64,000 nucleotides of DNA from Botryllus schlosseri (taxonomy: Eukaryota): NCBI GenBank assembly GCA_051294905.1, contig CM119381.1:14632001-14696000 (forward strand), written 5' to 3'. Of the stretch, positions 53,251-64,000 are shown one piece after another. Position 1 is the stretch's first letter. Every line of letters starts with the position of its first letter. The position numbers and the translations under genes are program-made. The notes under the pieces are model-generated. The model saw nothing but the letters and a program-made list of their open reading frames with translations, was not told the DNA's origin and ran no database searches.

Positions 53251-54126
53251 CAGGGCGATTTTTTTTGACATGTCAACATTTGTCAAAATTTTGTCAAAAT
53301 TGTAGCGTTAGGTCAAAATTTGTCAAAATTGTTTACAAAGTCAAAATTTTTTTGACCTCAGCATTTCGTTTGTATCGTAGATTTTGCACTGTCGGCGAGC
53401 TTATCATTTGTCAGTTTACAGCTTGTAGCCTACTATAGGCCTACCGTTGTAAACGTCCCATCATCTGTTCATTGTGAATCATAAACGGTCAAATGAAACA
53501 AATAGGTGGACATGGTTTTATGGTCAACGTACCGCAATATCCTAACTGAAGCAAGACTGTCTGGACATTGCACGGTTCTTATATCAAGAAGCGCAAGCTG
53601 AAAAATTGTGATGTAGACAATATTGTCAGAATGAAGCAACACGGCGTGTCACCAGCAGTGTACGCACGCACAACTTCAGTGTTGTCAGCCAACAAATGCT
53701 GCTGTTGAACGTTCTTTCTCCATTCTTGGCAAGCTACTTGTAAGGACAGACACTTTCTACCCGAGAATGTAAGAAAGTATCTTTCGTTGTTGTACTACAA
53801 CAAAATTTATAATACGTGATACGTAATACGTGATGTAAATACTGGAATTCTTCATAGGGCAAGATTTCGTTAAAATACTAGTTTTTTCATGTAAAAATTT
53901 ATCAGTTTTTGAGCCAAAAACGTTTTATCAGGCCAAACTACTTCGTAAGGACAGACAGTTCCAATCAGAAATGAAGATAAGTAGTACAATTTTAAGTATG
54001 CGAAAACACCTAATTTGCATACGTGAGGTCAAATTTTGGTCAAAATTCATTTTTTAGGTAAAAAAAAATCGACATTTAAATTTTTTTGGTCAAAATCTTC
54101 CGTTTTTAGGTAAAAAAATCGCCCTA
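53251..54126 (+). mobile_element. Non-autonomous hAT derivative, 876 bp, intact ends
   Basis: TIRs cagggcgattttttt / aaaaaaatcgcccta; perfect TSD attatcag; internal remnant QPTNAAVERSFSILGKLL...ENVRKYLSLLYYN of a hAT C-terminal dimerisation domain. Confidence 0.92.
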
Positions 54127-54670
54127 ATTATCAGATGTCATGCCTTATCTACTTCGATGTCACGCAGTAGCTTTGTGCCTTGGAATGAAAAAAAGATCGT
54201 ACATAGGCATTCATATTTTCATATGCCGAAGACACGAAATCTACAGTACGAAACACAAAACCATGTATTGAACAGATAGTATACCTCCCTGTACTTGTAT
54301 CGTAAATATACGGTTTCGTCACTATGCCTCACGTATTTCATAAATACGACAATGGAAAGAATATATAGGGCAGGCTAGCCGTTCTTTATCGATAGCAACT
54401 GATCGAATTTCGTTTTTAATGCCAGAACCCTGCTTGGCCACTGAATGGTGGTACGCCAAAACCCATGTGTTCACAACGACTGTTTCCTCTCATATAACCT
54501 GGAGATTTAGTAAATGGAATGATATTATCAATATCCTGACCTAATTAGCCAAACTACTCCGCGAAAGAAGGAAAAAATGAGAAAGTAGATCTACATTGAA
54601 TATGAATTTCGGCTAGTTCCGTCGCGAGAAAAGCGGGAAATAGTTATATCCTCTTCATATATTTCGATTA

Positions 54671-54678
54671 TGACGTCA
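54671..54678 (+). promoter_or_regulatory. CRE palindrome TGACGTCA upstream of the H1/PL gene
   Basis: ttatgacgtcata ~65 bp before the first ATG, with AT-rich attaatata just downstream. The motif is frequent elsewhere in the window. Confidence 0.3.
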
Positions 54679-54742
54679 TAGGCAAAATTCATTAATATAC
54701 CAGTTTCGGTTACGTCCGAAAGATAGCAATAAATCCACAATC

Positions 54743-55366
54743 ATGACAATATGCGGTAATCTAAACATAGTTATGGCATATGCTAAGGAATCCGAAGCAG
54801 ACATGACCCCCGCCACCTCGGAAGAGAGTGTTGCCGTGCCGGAGCCCTCGACCGGAGGCCCGAGCTCTCGCCACCCTAGCTACAACGCGATGGTGAAGAA
54901 AGCCATTGTTTCTCTTAAGAACAAAAGTGGTGCTTCGCCAAAAGCCATCTCCAACTTCATCTGCAGCAACTTCGGCGTCAAAAAGACACCATGTGTAAGC
55001 GCAGTAGCCCGATCCCTGAAGAGAATGACCAAGAAGGGATTGGTCGCCAGGAACAGGCGAAACCGCTACAAGCTCACCGGAAAGGGCCGTAAGAACAAGC
55101 GCCGACGCAGGCGACGTGGCCGCAAGGCTTCCAAGAAGGCCGGACGCAGACGCCGCAAGAAGAAGTCCAAGAAGTCCAAGAAATCTAAGAAGTCCAAGAA
55201 GGGCAAGAAGAGGAGGCGAAAGGCTGCTAAGAAATCCCGCAAGGCTCGCCGTGGCCGCAAGCGCAGACGTGCGACCAAGAAGCGCACCCGACGTGTGACT
55301 AAGAGACGCACGCGCAAGCGAGGAAAGAAGGCGAAGAAGGCCGGAAGGAGAAGGCGCAAGCGTTAA
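54743..55366 (+). CDS. Histone H1-related, protamine-like (PL-I type) basic nuclear protein, intronless
   Basis: H15 winged-helix motifs HPSYNAMVKKAIVSLKNKSGASPKAISNFI...SLKRMTKKGLV...RYKL, followed by a ~95-aa tail almost entirely of Lys, Arg, Ser, Ala, Gly and Thr. Acidic N-terminal arm; alternative starts at 54773 and 54803. ATTAAA at 55399-55404 and no histone stem-loop. Confidence 0.9.
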   Translation: MTICGNLNIVMAYAKESEADMTPATSEESVAVPEPSTGGPSSRHPSYNAMVKKAIVSLKNKSGASPKAISNFICSNFGVKKTPCVSAVARSLKRMTKKGLVARNRRNRYKLTGKGRKNKRRRRRRGRKASKKAGRRRRKKKSKKSKKSKKSKKGKKRRRKAAKKSRKARRGRKRRRATKKRTRRVTKRRTRKRGKKAKKAGRRRRKR

Positions 55367-55899
55367 GCTACACATCATGTCGCTTTCTGAAAAAAAAAAT
55401 TAAAGTTTCGAATTTTTTCTGACTATTTTGACTTTGATGAAATACAAATCGGGATTTGTTATTTGGTAAAAAAAAGTCTATTGATATTCGCTGTTTGTAG
55501 GGATTTTGGAGTCGTGTAATCGGTGACAATCTGCATGACATGATAAGGCTATCGATGACGCTATTCTTTCGTTATAGTCTCACGCGGGCGCCGCGAGACT
55601 AGTATGGCAATAATAAGTGGCTTCGTATAAAACACTCCTCGTCAACAATGTCATTTCAAAGATCGAGTAGCTAGACCAGCAACAGCGTGAGGTGTATATA
55701 ACAAAGTTCTCGTGGCCTATTGATCACACTTGGATTTTAATTCTCGCTAGACGTAAGAGCGTGAAAGTTGCAATAAATATGCCTATACCTGCCAAGTTAT
55801 AGCCTAAAACATATATAGTCGAAATACAAGCAATTACTACTAAATAAATACAGTCCATCCTCAAGATTACCGGACCACGACTGGCCTATCGATCTCGCT

Positions 55900-56131
55900 T
55901 CCCATGGCATGCCGCCCTATTCTTGTCGCTTTCTTTTTCTGTACTATCTTCTTCACTTTCATTCAGTGTGCATGCCTCCTCTTTACATCGCCTAGGCCAA
56001 GGTGGGTGTCTGATTCCATAGACCACTCCTATAGTCGCTTCGACATCTTCCTGTCTTTTCATTGTATCGCATTTTTTGTGGTGTATTGAACTGATAAAAT
56101 TACTAATAAACCAATGATGATGATGATGATA
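55900..56131 (+). repeat. Diverged repeat resembling a retroposon 3' end with (ATG)n tail; second copy at ~57400-57620
   Basis: Shared blocks ttttcattcagtg...tttacatcgcctaggc...gtcgcttcgaca...tggtgt...taaaatta in both copies. Confidence 0.45.
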
Positions 56132-59474: not shown

Positions 59475-62400
59475 TCATTTTGAATTCAGTTTCACGAGGC
59501 CTTTGAGAACCTTACACATTTGCAGAATGGCGCCGTCCTTCGGAATATAATGTGGACCGAGATCGCTGTAATACACATACGGGAAGCGCAACACCCATAC
59601 CGAATCATTGGAAAGCAGTATATCAGGCACACCCGTTGTGAAAGTGGGGGTAGGCGATGGCCCTGGGACTACCTGTGGGTTGATAACAACTTCAATTGAC
59701 GGTTCAGGAGGGATTACAACGTATACCCGCATCAGCTGACCAATGAGCGTCTTGCCACCTCGGCCCGATGCTGGGCTGGGTGAGTAGAGAGGCATATCGT
59801 TCTCCAGCAGTTTATGACAAGATTCCTTCACCAACCCACTGCTTGTTACTTTGACGGGCTTATCCGGAGCGGAACATATAAATCTCTGACCACGCAACGT
59901 CTCGTATTCATAACCTATAAAAGCCCTGGCGGTGCTGTCGTCTTTGTTTCTTCGTCCGAGCAGCGTCTTTTGCTCTTTTATTTGCGGTATGATCTTTTTA
60001 CCCATACCAGGTGGTGCCTCGCCCGGAGACGGCCATTGTTGCATATCCTCACGCGGCTTGTCCACAACTATGTCCCAAGGGATAAGAAAATTCGTACCGG
60101 GTAGGAATCCAGGCGATTCCAAACCTCGCATGGCAGAATAGGTCGAATAAGACCCCACTCTCGCCAAACTCCACGAAGGGTACAACGGCAGAGCGCCTTT
60201 TTTACAGTTACTATGAATCATACCGTCAACATAATTGACTTTCTCTTCTTTGATGTGAGCAAAATTACGAGTTATTGGGTCCGCCGTGGATTCTCTCTGG
60301 CTATCGTGATCCACTGGACTCTGCATGCGGCCGCTGCCTTCCGACTGACCGCCGAAACTGAACGCGAAATTCAAGCTCGTGGCAACATGACTCTTGATCG
60401 GCTCTTTGATCGTAATCTTCTTCAAGTCCGAGTTGGCGGCTTCAACAAAGTCACGTTTTGGGGATTTCATTGGGGACGTGACAGAGGCAACATTAGGTTT
60501 GCCTTGGGATATCTCCTGACTGCTCACATCGGCATTGTCCTTTCCATCATAACTGTCCTGAGTCGAGACGGCGTTATCAAACTCTTCAGCAGTTGCTTCA
60601 GCAACGTTTTCAGAATGCTCCAAGGAACGTGCTTTCTCAGGCGCTTTCCTACCCTCTTTCGCGTTGCATTCGTAATCCTGAGTCGGTATGCTGCTAGATT
60701 GAATCAAACCCGAATAGGTGACTCGATAGTCTTGCTGATCGGTACCGATGACCTGCGACGAGAAGGACGCAGTCCCATCCGTGTTGTAACACACGTCGAC
60801 ATTCCCTTGAGATTCTTCACCTGGGTGATACACCGGGAAAGGATAAACCTCCAACGGCTGAATATGGGCTTTTTTGTCCAATTGCACGTAAAATTCGTAG
60901 TTTCCTTCTTTCAAGTCGAAGGGATCGTCCCTCATTCCCTGTGTGGTTCCGCAGCTACTGGTGGCCGTGGAACGGGACCTCGATGAATGGTGAAGAATTG
61001 GAGGGTCCGCATCGGGGTCTTGCACTTCGTTAAGCGCGGCCAGGATGTGGTAGCGATGAACGCAGTGCCTATCCGTGAGCGACCGAACCTCGCACAGCTG
61101 TCTGCCGTTCTGCCAAAATGCGACGCATTCCGACTTCAGTTGGTCGCGGTATTTCTCGATAGCCGGTCCGCGCGCATGTTGATTAAATGTATGCAACGCC
61201 TGAAGTAAAAATTTGGTGCATCGATTTTGGTGAAACTAAACAACACAATACAAACACTTACCTGCGCTAATTGATTATTGTGCACTTTGCTAGTGTAATG
61301 AGGTGGCAGGCTGCTTTGATACACAGCAACAGCCATCGGCAGGACTTTGCCGCACCTGCGCATTGAACGGGAAGCATTTTGATGACAATCTCACGCAAAA
61401 TACATGCACTGCAGCTTGCAAAATCATACCTTGCTTCGCTGAACTTGGTTTCGATGTCAATTTTCGAGGTCAGCTGTTGTCGCATATTCGCGACTTTGGA
61501 AAACAGGTCCAAAACAGTCTTGCCATTTTCTGTGCCTTTCTTCACGGCGCCAGCGCCCTCAAATTCAGGTCCTAGTGAATTTGAATCGGTGAGCAACAGG
61601 TTGTACAGACCATTCGCGACCTGAGATAATACAATTAATCAGATGATGATTATGGTGATCATGTGAGAGATCCATTACCTTCAACCACGTTTTTAACGTT
61701 GGCAATTCAAAATGGGAGGGTAGCGGGTTTCGCCCTATGCTGTCATTGAAACCTTTCTTCTCCAGAACGAGCGCTGTGTGTTCGTACAGGAAGGATTTCA
61801 GACTCCCTTCACTACGTAAAAGATAATACCTCATATCGTAGATGCCAACAATGAGTGAGTGACAAACAAAGTTACGGATAATCTTCAGAAATTTCATCTT
61901 CATCCATTGCGTAGTCTTCTTGCCAATGGGTTGGTGTGTTCAATAGGAGCTGTTTCGCTCTCGAAGTAGAATGGGGATCTCGATGCCTCTTGAAAGATGC
62001 TCGAAGAAGCTGGAACATGTCGGCGGTGGAATTGTTTGACTGTGAATAGATCAAATCAAATGAAAATCACTGTGTTAAAAAAGACAAATTTAATCAAATG
62101 AAACTACTTGACGAGTTTCTTCATGGTCCGCCATAATATGCACAAACGCTTGGTTCGGTGGTACACTGAATAAGCAATTCACGGCATTATTTGTGAGGAC
62201 CCGGCTATTGCGTAAAATCCTGTATACCTGCCAAGTTTTGCAAGTGAACATAACTTGATACAGTTCAAGCAATACATTCAAACCCACTTGATCTTCGATG
62301 GTATGTTGCAATCTTTTCACAGGACTTTTCTTCTTTTTGGACACAATTCCTGGCTCGCTGCTATTTTTGGTATCACCATCAACCTGTTGTAAAGCGACAT

Positions 62401-64000
62401 AAGCAGAGTACTTTAAGAATACCGCCTTGCTGATCAAAGTTAAAAGGTCATACTTTCAAAGTACCATACTTATAACTTGGGCGATTTTTTACATAAAAAA
62501 GGGAATATTTTGACCTAAGAAATCAAAACTTGGGACTTTTTAGACCTTAAAAACTCAATTTTGCCCAAATTTTGACGACATGTATGTAAATTAGGTGTTT
62601 CCCTGCATGTTAGAATTGTAGGCTACTACTTATCTTTATTTCTGGCTGAAACTGTCTGTCCTTACGAAATAGTTTAACCTGAAAAAACTTATTGGACTTG
62701 AAAACAGACTAATTTTCATATGAAAAATCTTTATTTCAACGGAATCTGGACCTTTGAAGAATTCCAGTAGTCCTTACTAACTAGCTTGCCAAGAATAGAC
62801 TAAGAACGTTCAACAGCAGCAGTTGTTGGCTGGCAACACTAAAGTTGTGAGTACACTAATGGTGACACAGCGTGTTACTTCATTCTGACAATGTTGTCTA
62901 TATCTCAATTGTTCATCACGCACTTCTTGATACAAGAACCAATGCCCACGCAGTCTTGCTTCAGTTAGGATATTGTGGCACGTTCAGCATAACGCCACAT
63001 CAACCTATTTGTTTCATTTGGCCATTTATGATCCACAATGAGCAGATAATGGGCGGCCTACAACGGTAGGCCTATAAAGTAGGCTAAGAGCAGTCAAATG
63101 ACAAGTTCTCTGACAGTGCAAACATTTATGACACAAACGAAATGTAGGTGGCAAAAAAATTTTGACTTTGTAAACAATTTTTTGACCTGAAGTGTGTCAA
63201 AAAAAAGCCGTTCTTATAGCATACCTGTTTGTGAGCGAGCGAATGCAGATGACATCTCTGAAAGACCAAAAGCAAGCGGGGTGGGCAAGGCCGAGCATTT
63301 ACCCACCAATCCCTACCGACGCCGCAATCCTTCAAAACATCCTTAATTACAGGCACCAATTTTTGACGAAGCGATGCAACTCTTTGAAACAGCCTGCAAA
63401 ATAAACATCATGCAATTCTGAATTGCCAGCAACAGCAATATTGCTATTGTACCTGTCGTAGCTGATGTCAAATTGACTAACTGGATGGGTGAGTATTAGG
63501 AGATGACAGACGGAGAATAGATATACTAAACCAAAGATGTGGCCAACCTGTAACGCAGAGCCAAAATGAGCACAGATTATCATACTTTTGCTAATACGGA
63601 TGCTAACTCCAACCAACTTTACTAACCTCGTGGCTCTTTACCAATGCATGCGATTCACTGCATGAGAATTTTTTTTCAGAGATTGCCGAAACAACTTCGT
63701 GAAGTCTGGTCGCATTGTAGATTGAAGTTAGTTGAAGATATAATATGTGATTCTCTTCATCCAAGTATCCCTCTATCTTCGGCCTTAAGGAATATTTGAG
63801 TATGATGATGGATGGCATACAATTATCATGCATATAAAATACACAGTATGTACTCATACGAACATGTATTCGAACAAAGAATTTTCTCTGTTTTCATCCT
63901 TTTTGACAGGTTTGCTCTTGTTTCCGTCAAGTGGCTGGTCGTAAGACTTGAGCAGGTTTTCAATAACAAAACTTCGATTTGATTCCCTCCATGCAGTTTT
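59475..64000 (-). CDS. SMG8: Nonsense-mediated decay factor SMG8, multi-exon, 5' end outside the window
   Basis: Last exon (61199-59475): SPGFLPGTNFLIPWDI, RAFIGYEYETLRGQRFICSAPDK, DMPLY, QLMRVYVV, VWVLRFPYVY. Upstream exons include KTAWRESN, IEGYLDEENHILYLQLTSI and ELPTLKTWL; short introns, e.g. 61200-61261. Confidence 0.93.
62477..63212 (-). mobile_element. Third copy (reverse orientation) of the hAT derivative, in an SMG8 intron
   Basis: Degenerate TIRs ttgggcgatttttt / aaaaaaagccgtt; TSD cttataac/cttatagc; internal sequence is the reverse complement of 53251-54126. Confidence 0.85.

What the first reader, a model, noticed from the sequence alone, without database searches (positions are those of the whole stretch)
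54743..55366. H1-to-protamine intermediate: winged-helix protein with a mosaic Lys-block/Arg-block tail
Seen: an H1 globular domain with two Cys, an acidic N-terminal arm, and a tail alternating Arg runs (KRRRRRRG, GRRRRK, KRRRA, KRTRR) with a Lys block (KKSKKSKKSKKSKK). The gene is intronless, has a poly(A)-type signal and no histone stem-loop, and stands alone in a repeat-rich interval. Known: tunicate sperm PL-I proteins are H1-related and differ between species in having Lys-rich or Arg-rich tails, which has been used to argue that protamines derive from H1. Inference: a sperm nuclear basic protein caught between the two states; the acidic arm may be a removable leader.
Basis: partly seen in the sequence, partly recalled or inferred. 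Interest (0 to 1): 0.7.

Follow-up and report, generated by a model that had tools for sequence, protein, structure and literature searches.

The report
Sea-squirt sperm protamine P1 gene
This is a real, expressed, intronless gene for the sea-squirt version of the already described H1-derived sperm "protamine" P1; its half-lysine, half-arginine tail is one ordinary point on a continuum seen across the family, not a new kind of protein.

Summary
The ORF encodes an acidic N-terminal arm, a linker-histone winged helix with two Cys, and a 92-residue tail (32 Lys, 34 Arg) with the quoted Arg runs and Lys block.

RNA reads show an unspliced, polyadenylated mRNA spanning 54758/9-55475 with no histone stem-loop. 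They also move the start.

The gene is single-copy. It sits in a roughly 1.7-kb unique island between two high-copy dispersed repeats.

Identity: it is the orthologue of tunicate P1 / protamine-like protein. It is 58-59% identical over the full alignment to Styela clava "protamine-like" and Styela montereyensis P1 protamine, and 52% to the Ciona orthologue. It falls inside that clade and away from this genome's four other H1 types.

"Intermediate" is numerically true but unexceptional. R/(K+R) is 0.52 here, 0.33 in Ciona and 0.72-0.75 in Styela, and 16 family members span 0.28-0.74. Tails align in frame. The Lys block is four tandem copies of a 9-nt unit, three of them identical, where relatives carry Arg. 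It therefore looks secondarily expanded rather than ancestral.

Sperm-specific expression and leader removal could not be tested. Verdict: new member of a known kind.

The parts
53600..54140 (.). upstream dispersed repeat; its left end was not mapped, and 53600 is only where my query began
   Evidence: At least 4570 candidate copies in the genome at 88-89% identity. They match query positions 1 to about 535-546 of window:53600-54700.
54671..54678 (+). palindromic CRE-type octamer TGACGTCA, about 85 nt before the cap site
   Evidence: Conserved with its flank (TGACGTCATAG) in relative L020 but not in Ciona. The motif is common in this window, 9 found against 1.2 expected.
54710..54718 (+). CRE-like element TTACGTCCG, part of the conserved core promoter
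   Evidence: ACGTCCG is invariant in the window, L020 and Ciona L021. All three have the same 10-nt spacing to the TATA-like box.
54728..54734 (+). TATA-like box AATAAAT
   Evidence: Lies 24-30 nt upstream of the mapped cap site. ATAAAT / ATATAT is aligned in all three species.
54758..55475 (+). mRNA: cap site at 54758/9, no intron, no spliced leader, poly(A) added after 55475
   Evidence: From run X24: 64 reads with the template-switch oligo before 54758, 28 reads with a poly(A) tail after 55475, no joints, and depth 60-110 per mate orientation (about 130-195 summed) only within this span.
54773..55366 (+). coding sequence, 197 aa plus stop; first AUG of the mRNA, 14-15 nt from the cap
   Evidence: Orthologues P0001-P0003 begin at the same MAYAK residues.
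54803..54850 (+). invariant N-arm motif (Met11 to Ser26); Met11 is a possible second start
   Evidence: 16/16 identical to Ciona and to both close relatives. Present in 16 family members. Synonymous changes are frequent here, so the constraint is on the protein.
54869..55087 (+). linker-histone winged-helix domain with a shortened wing loop; Cys64 and Cys74
   Evidence: Pfam E=5e-12, AF2 model, Foldseek match to H1.0/H5. A 5-residue wing-loop deletion is shared by the P1 clade.
55088..55363 (+). basic tail, 92 aa, 32 Lys and 34 Arg (72% basic)
   Evidence: It is colinear in frame 0 with the Styela tails, z=8 against shuffles. Other frames give z -1.1 to 2.6 against much lower raw scores.
55160..55195 (+). 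Lys block core: four tandem 9-nt units (AAGAAGTCC type), three of them identical
   Evidence: Units 1-2 stand where relA, relB and both Styela have R-R-G-R-K. No length polymorphism was seen in the reads.
55367..55475 (+). 3' UTR with ATTAAA (55399) and AATACA (55441); no histone stem-loop
55817..56120 (.). downstream dispersed repeat; its right end was not mapped
   Evidence: At least 2349 candidate copies at about 96% identity. The 30-mer that reads carry before 55817 occurs 2492 times in the genome. The RNA depth there therefore comes from other copies.

Best explanation
This is the single-copy orthologue, in a stolidobranch sea squirt, of the tunicate sperm nuclear basic protein P1 (the PL-I / 'protamine-like' lineage derived from histone H1).

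Shown:
- A compact TATA-type promoter with a conserved CRE-like element drives an unspliced, capped and polyadenylated mRNA of about 717 nt.
- The mRNA is very abundant in some libraries.
- It encodes a 197-aa protein with three parts: an invariant acidic, Ser/Thr-rich N-arm; an H1-type winged helix with a shortened wing; and a 72%-basic Lys/Arg tail.

Inferred, from the known behaviour of H1 and of P1 in Styela sperm:
- The protein is made in spermatids.
- The winged helix and tail bind and neutralise DNA, replacing or supplementing histones to condense sperm chromatin.
- The N-arm, which has a TP site and CK2-type S/T-x-x-E sites, acts as a regulatory or processing module that tempers DNA binding until deposition.
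- With only 14-15 nt of 5' leader, initiation may be shared between Met1 and the universally conserved Met11.

On the tail: its Lys/Arg mix reflects in-frame Lys<->Arg exchange plus slippage of a 9-nt Lys-Lys-Ser unit. It is not a frozen transitional state.
For: Family and fold:
- Linker-histone domain by Pfam and by fold.
- Best named homologues are S. montereyensis P1 protamine and S. clava protamine-like.
- In the globular-domain tree, the 12 P1-like sequences form a clade (80/98, stem 1.44). The window groups with two relatives (96/90) and with Styela (100/99). This genome's four other H1 types fall outside.
- Single copy in the genome.

Transcript and promoter:
- Cap site, absence of introns and the poly(A) tail come from raw RNA reads.
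- No stem-loop here, with a positive control elsewhere in the genome.
- The promoter block ACGTCCG-N10-TATA is conserved out to Ciona.

Constraint and tail evolution:
- In transcripts, 9 coding differences are synonymous and 4 are non-synonymous.
- The N-arm is 16/16 identical to Ciona.
- The tail is colinear in frame.
- The K/R continuum spans the family.
- The 9-nt repeat structure of the Lys block.

Literature: tunicate SNBPs arose from H1 (PMC9917458 and PMC11607694, both citing Lewis et al. 2004 and Saperas & Ausio 2013).
Against: - No tissue label could be read for any run, so testis or spermatid specificity is not shown.
- One RNA run (X21) gave no reads at all. The tool flags this as no test.
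- No protein-level evidence exists for this species.
- The N-arm function, dual initiation and any processing are inference only.
- TGACGTCA-type motifs are generally common in this window, so the promoter motif is not specific evidence for a spermatid programme.
- The P1 clade as a whole has only moderate bootstrap support (80), and the AU test is uninformative (p=0.485).
Confidence: 0.85

Rival explanations
1. It is a replication-independent somatic linker-histone variant of the H1.0/H5 type, used in differentiated cells, and not a sperm protein.
For: The best solved-structure sequence and fold matches are H1.0 and H5. The mRNA is polyadenylated and lacks a stem-loop, like H1.0. Tissue of expression is unknown.
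Against: It is 58-59% identical over the full alignment (65% and 61% in the local BLASTP) to proteins named P1 protamine / protamine-like. It groups with them and not with this genome's other H1 genes. It shares their wing-loop deletion, N-arm motif and 70%-basic Arg-containing tail.
Confidence: 0.07
2. It is an oocyte or cleavage-stage linker histone stored as maternal poly(A) mRNA.
For: The transcript is present in an oligo-dT marine metatranscriptome (run X6). That sample could contain eggs, embryos or larvae as well as sperm-bearing adults.
Against: There is orthology to a protein isolated from Styela sperm (the name given by the source). From general knowledge, known oocyte linker histones are longer and far less basic. 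Nothing here points to maternal expression.
Confidence: 0.04
3. It is a processed retrocopy or decaying pseudogene that happens to keep an open frame between transposable elements.
For: It is intronless and lies between two high-copy dispersed repeats.
Against: It is the only copy in the genome. The Ciona orthologue is also a single exon. The promoter is conserved across species. The transcript is abundant and precisely capped and polyadenylated. Variants are mostly synonymous.
Confidence: 0.01

Closest known systems
Styela montereyensis P1 protamine (UniProt Q7YXH7 = P0004) and Styela clava 'protamine-like' (P0003)
   Same: Same three-part architecture and nearly the same length. The N-arm motif is 14-15/16 identical. 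The winged helix is 62% identical and has the same wing-loop deletion. The tail is colinear in frame (z=8) and about 72% basic.
   Different: The tail is half Lys (R/(K+R) 0.52, against 0.72-0.75). A (Lys-Lys-Ser)n block stands where Styela has an Arg run. A helix-2 Cys is present here, whereas Styela has a Cys in helix 3 instead.
Ciona intestinalis LOC100184486 (P0005), the lysine-rich tunicate PL-type orthologue
   Same: Single-exon gene. The N-arm is 16/16 identical, both Cys are conserved, and the ACGTCCG-N10-TATA promoter block is the same.
   Different: The Ciona tail has 46 Lys and 23 Arg (0.33). Only 40 of 92 tail positions are identical.
Vertebrate H1.0 / H5 (replication-independent linker histones)
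   Same: Winged-helix fold with TM 0.79-0.89. Polyadenylated mRNA without a stem-loop.
   Different: Only 23-28% identity. H1.0/H5 have the full wing loop (GxGASGSF), a Lys/Ala/Pro-rich tail and no TPATSEES-type arm.
Replication-type H1 genes of the same genome (C8 and C1 histone-repeat clusters; L002, L003)
   Same: Same Pfam domain.
   Different: They are tandemly repeated next to core histone genes, or followed by a histone stem-loop. Their tails are Lys/Ala/Pro-rich with almost no Arg. They fall outside the P1 clade.

Membership tests
Tunicate sperm P1 / PL-I (H1-derived sperm nuclear basic protein) | Linker-histone winged-helix core | tested here: met
   PF00538 E=5e-12. AF2 model with pLDDT 92-95 over the domain. 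Foldseek match to H1.0/H5 with TM 0.79-0.89.
Tunicate sperm P1 / PL-I (H1-derived sperm nuclear basic protein) | Groups with biochemically named P1 proteins rather than with other H1 genes of its own genome | tested here: met
   E=1.4e-43 to S. montereyensis P1. Clade with Styela supported 100/99; whole P1 clade 80/98; own H1 genes outside.
Tunicate sperm P1 / PL-I (H1-derived sperm nuclear basic protein) | Conserved N-terminal arm (M-TPATSEES-V-VP-PS) and shortened wing loop. These are family signatures as seen here's alignment. | tested here: met
   16/16 identical to Ciona. Motif present in 16 members. The 5-residue deletion is shared by all 12 P1-like rows.
Tunicate sperm P1 / PL-I (H1-derived sperm nuclear basic protein) | Very basic Lys/Arg C-terminal tail (about 70% basic) | tested here: met
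   72% basic, 32 K and 34 R.
Tunicate sperm P1 / PL-I (H1-derived sperm nuclear basic protein) | Present in sperm chromatin, with testis- or spermatid-specific expression | not testable with these tools
   The transcript is abundant in several runs, but sample labels are coded. No proteomic data are available.
Protamine in the strict compositional sense (P-type, arginine-dominated) | Arginine clearly dominates lysine | tested here: not met
   The whole protein is 20.8% Arg and 22.8% Lys. Tail R/(K+R) is 0.52. By composition it is protamine-like (PL), not P-type.
Replication-dependent histone H1 | 3' histone stem-loop, no poly(A), and residence in a histone gene cluster | tested here: not met
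   No RF00032 match at E<=10, with a positive control in L002/L004. Poly(A) tail observed. No histone genes in the window.

The most novel reading that the evidence does not exclude
Tunicate P1 tails may move along the lysine-to-arginine axis in both directions. The route would be in-frame Lys<->Arg replacement plus microsatellite-like slippage of short Lys-coding units. This species would then have re-gained lysine inside an Arg-rich lineage. That differs from the single frameshift step which, as I recall it (paper not held here), was proposed for the H1-to-protamine jump.

Separately, the invariant 16-residue N-arm, better conserved than the DNA-binding fold, may be a dedicated regulatory or processing module common to all tunicate sperm PL proteins.
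Probability: 0.4. Interest if true: 0.45.

Novelty: new member of a known kind. Interest (0 to 1): 0.3.

Why it matters
The H1 -> protamine-like -> protamine series in tunicates is the textbook case for the origin of protamines. Another orthologue adds little by itself.

What is useful here is a well-defined gene model: cap site, start codon, poly(A) site and a roughly 100-bp conserved promoter. The gene also sits mid-way in composition between Ciona and Styela. Its Lys block can be dated as recent from its identical 9-nt units.

Together with the in-frame colinearity of the tails, this gives a concrete and testable picture of how tail composition drifts. It also flags the invariant N-arm as the least understood and most constrained part of these proteins.

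Tried and rejected
- **Lewis et al. 2004 (PNAS; PMC384709).** The paper could not be read by DOI or by PMC id. Its frameshift model is therefore cited from memory only. Its general claim is cited through PMC9917458 and PMC11607694.
- **Literature searches.** Searches for ascidian testis or protamine expression data gave nothing usable.
- **Whole-protein tree.** A tree that included the tails and the very divergent L018 protein was unresolved. I rebuilt it on the globular domain without L018 and P0023.
- **Second word-indexed protein search.** Restricting the search to residues 1-105 found only 4 proteins. The exhaustive profile search was needed to see the breadth of the family.
- **Codon-step analysis of Lys<->Arg differences.** It was uninformative. 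Synonymous sites between the window and its nearest relative are already about 40% changed, so three-step codon differences are expected.
- **Apparent second transcript from 55817.** It is read spill-over from about 2,400 copies of a dispersed repeat, not a neighbouring gene or a host gene whose intron holds P1.
- **Run X21.** It gave zero reads, which the tool marks as no test.
- **Bacterial promoter/terminator scan.** Irrelevant to this eukaryotic gene.
- **Spatial proximity of the two Cys.** It could not be measured because model coordinates are not exposed.

Full report
**1. What is in the sequence**

The ORF at 54743-55366 on the + strand is real. Its product matches Pfam Linker_histone (PF00538) with E=5e-12.

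An AlphaFold2 model built on an alignment of 12 family members has pLDDT 92-95 over the domain. It shows three helices followed by a beta-hairpin. Foldseek places it on the globular domains of H1.0, H1 and H5 with target TM-scores of 0.79-0.89 and rmsd 1.1-2.0 A.

- Two cysteines, at residues 64 and 74 of the corrected protein.
- An acidic N-terminal arm with 6 acidic residues and 1 basic residue in the first 32.
- The quoted Arg runs and the Lys block.

**2. The transcript, and a corrected start**

Raw RNA reads of one run (X24) cover 54759-55475 only, with no joint of any kind. The gene is therefore intronless and not trans-spliced.

Sixty-four reads carry the SMART template-switch oligo, plus one untemplated G, immediately before 54758/9. 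That marks a capped 5' end.

The first AUG of the mRNA is at 54773, which gives a 197-aa protein. It starts exactly like its three closest orthologues. The 5' leader is only 14-15 nt. A second in-frame Met (Met11, at 54803) is invariant across the aligned family members. Shared initiation is plausible but is only an inference.

Twenty-eight reads continue into a long poly(A) run after 55475, whereas the genome has only 8 A there. AATACA at 55441 is better placed.

No match to the histone 3' stem-loop model appears, even at E<=10. The same model does find stem-loops at two other histone loci of this genome.

Contigs of an oligo-dT metatranscriptome and of other runs also hold the transcript. 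One small library has very high word depth.

Coding differences seen in transcripts are 9 synonymous and 4 non-synonymous. No length variation was seen in the Lys block.

**3. Surroundings**

The gene is single-copy in the 496-Mb assembly.

- Sequence up to about 54140 belongs to a dispersed repeat with at least 4570 candidate copies.
- Sequence from 55817 belongs to another with at least 2349 candidates at about 96% identity.
- The RNA depth that appears from 55817 comes from those copies. The 30-mer that reads carry before 55817 is absent from the window but occurs 2492 times in the genome.
- The stretches 54773-55363 and 55480-55816 each have a single match in the genome, and the upstream repeat match ends near 54140, so about 54145-55816 appears to be a unique island.

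So 'alone in a repeat-rich interval' is right for dispersed repeats, although there are no local repeats. The nearest recognisable neighbour is an SMG8 gene on the minus strand from 59475.

**4. Promoter**

An alignment of the upstream region was made with a close relative's genomic contig (L020) and with Ciona (L021). It shows an invariant ACGTCCG (window 54712-54718) followed after exactly 10 nt by a TATA-like box (AATAAAT, 54728-54734). The box lies 24-30 nt before the mapped cap site.

A perfect TGACGTCA palindrome at 54671 is shared with the close relative only.

This CRE-like plus TATA arrangement recalls spermatid promoters of mammals. That is my own knowledge, offered as a lead only. 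TGACGTCA is generally over-represented in this window, 9 found against 1.2 expected, so I give it little weight.

**5. What it is**

The best named relatives are:
- 'protamine-like' of Styela clava (E=8.6e-50);
- 'P1 protamine' of Styela montereyensis, Q7YXH7 (E=1.4e-43);
- an uncharacterised Ciona protein (E=1.9e-34).

Two unnamed proteins from public assemblies are 78-81% identical.

The genome holds four other kinds of H1 gene: two tandem histone-repeat clusters on C8 and C1, and two single genes on C10.

On a globular-domain tree the 12 P1-like sequences form a clade with support 80/98 and a long stem of 1.44. The window groups with its two close relatives (96/90), and that trio groups with the two Styela proteins (100/99). 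All own-genome H1s lie outside.

The clade shares a 5-residue deletion in the wing loop. It also shares an N-arm motif that is 16/16 identical between this species and Ciona. By comparison, the globular domain is 58% identical and the tail 43%.

Codons in the arm differ synonymously as often as elsewhere, so the constraint is on the peptide.

The literature available here states that tunicate sperm nuclear basic proteins arose from H1 (PMC9917458; PMC11607694, citing Lewis et al. 2004 and Saperas & Ausio 2013).

**6. Is it an 'intermediate'?**

Tail composition, as R/(K+R) after the conserved KLTGKG:

| Protein | R/(K+R) |
|---|---|
| Ciona | 0.33 |
| This gene | 0.52 |
| Close relative A (P0001) | 0.55 |
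| Close relative B (P0002) | 0.66 |
| S. montereyensis P1 | 0.72 |
| S. clava | 0.75 |

An exhaustive profile search found further members carrying the arm motif. Over 16 members the ratio runs continuously from 0.28 to 0.74, and six of them lie between 0.44 and 0.61. The composition really is intermediate, but that is common in the family.

The tails are colinear in the same reading frame:
- The window's tail aligns with the Styela tails at z=8 against shuffled versions.
- The Ciona tail does so at z=2.7-3.4.
- For the Ciona tail the two shifted frames give no signal (z -0.5 to 1.5). For the window and its relative they give much lower raw scores (11-47 against 247-266) and z of -1.1 to 3.0.

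No frameshift is therefore needed to relate these orthologues. Frameshifted tail variants do exist among database entries (P0018, P0038).

**7. Origin of the Lys block**

The block is four tandem 9-nt units at 55160-55195, three of them identical in sequence.

The last two units correspond to two diverged units in the close relative. The first two stand where both close relatives and both Styela proteins have Arg-Arg-Gly-Arg-Lys.

About 40% of identical residues between the window and that relative already use different codons. Identical units therefore point to recent slippage. The Lys block is most simply a secondary gain in an Arg-richer lineage, not a leftover of a lysine-rich ancestor.

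This is an inference. Strict parsimony on the five stolidobranch sequences plus Ciona allows two equally short histories.

**8. How it most likely works**

Shown: gene structure, transcript, fold, family membership and tail composition.

Inferred from what is established for H1 and for P1 in Styela sperm:
- The protein is synthesised in spermatids.
- It binds DNA through the winged helix.
- It neutralises phosphate charge with the tail to compact sperm chromatin.

The N-arm carries a Thr-Pro site and S/T-x-x-E sites that fit proline-directed and CK2-type kinases. This reading comes from the sequence and was not tested. I propose that the arm is a phospho-regulated or processed module that restrains the tail until deposition.

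Its extreme conservation argues that it is more than a charge-balancing leader.

**9. What could not be done**

- One RNA run gave no reads and is no test.
- The key 2004 paper is not held.

**10. Verdict**

This is a correct observation of a real gene, with a corrected start codon. It is a new member of the known tunicate P1 / protamine-like family. Its mixed tail is ordinary for that family, and the Lys part is probably secondary. Interest is modest.

Noticed in passing
window 1-20700, minus strand: Tandem 5S rDNA array: 47 full-length 5S rRNA genes (99.6-104 bits), with a repeat period of 466 nt and some 363-nt units.
   Followed up: partly
G000:C11:525464-525610 (locus L018:1348-1746, minus strand): A second small H1-derived basic protein on the same chromosome. 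It is 133 aa, matches PF00538 at E=1.6e-8 and ends in an Arg-rich stretch. Only one homologue was found among 5.8 billion proteins (P0028, 78% identical). It may be a lineage-restricted sperm basic protein; expression is untested.
   Followed up: partly
G000:C10 (locus L002:1417-2103): A 208-aa H1 whose tail is built of repeated SPKK-type motifs. A histone 3' stem-loop follows 14 nt after the stop. SPKK repeats are known from sea-urchin sperm histones (my own knowledge).
   Followed up: no
window 53600-54140 and 55817-56120: Two different high-copy dispersed repeats bracket the gene, with at least 4570 and at least 2349 candidate copies. The downstream one is about 96% identical among copies and is transcribed somewhere in the genome.
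   Followed up: partly
proteins P0018 and P0038 (public metatranscriptome catalogues): P1-family members whose tails switch for a stretch, or entirely, into the +1 frame, giving Arg/Pro-rich sequence. These are either real frameshift alleles or assembly errors.
   Followed up: no
proteins P0029 (746 aa) and P0035 (486 aa): Proteins with 7 and 4 tandem winged-helix domains are among the best hits of the P1 profile. Their taxa are unknown. They may be multi-domain linker-histone-like precursors.
   Followed up: no
window 59475-62437, minus strand: Exons of an SMG8 (nonsense-mediated decay factor) gene. PF10220 matches the largest exon at E=1e-119.
   Followed up: no
whole window: The CRE palindrome TGACGTCA occurs 9 times against 1.2 expected from shuffles. 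This suggests it is a common promoter element in this genome.
   Followed up: no
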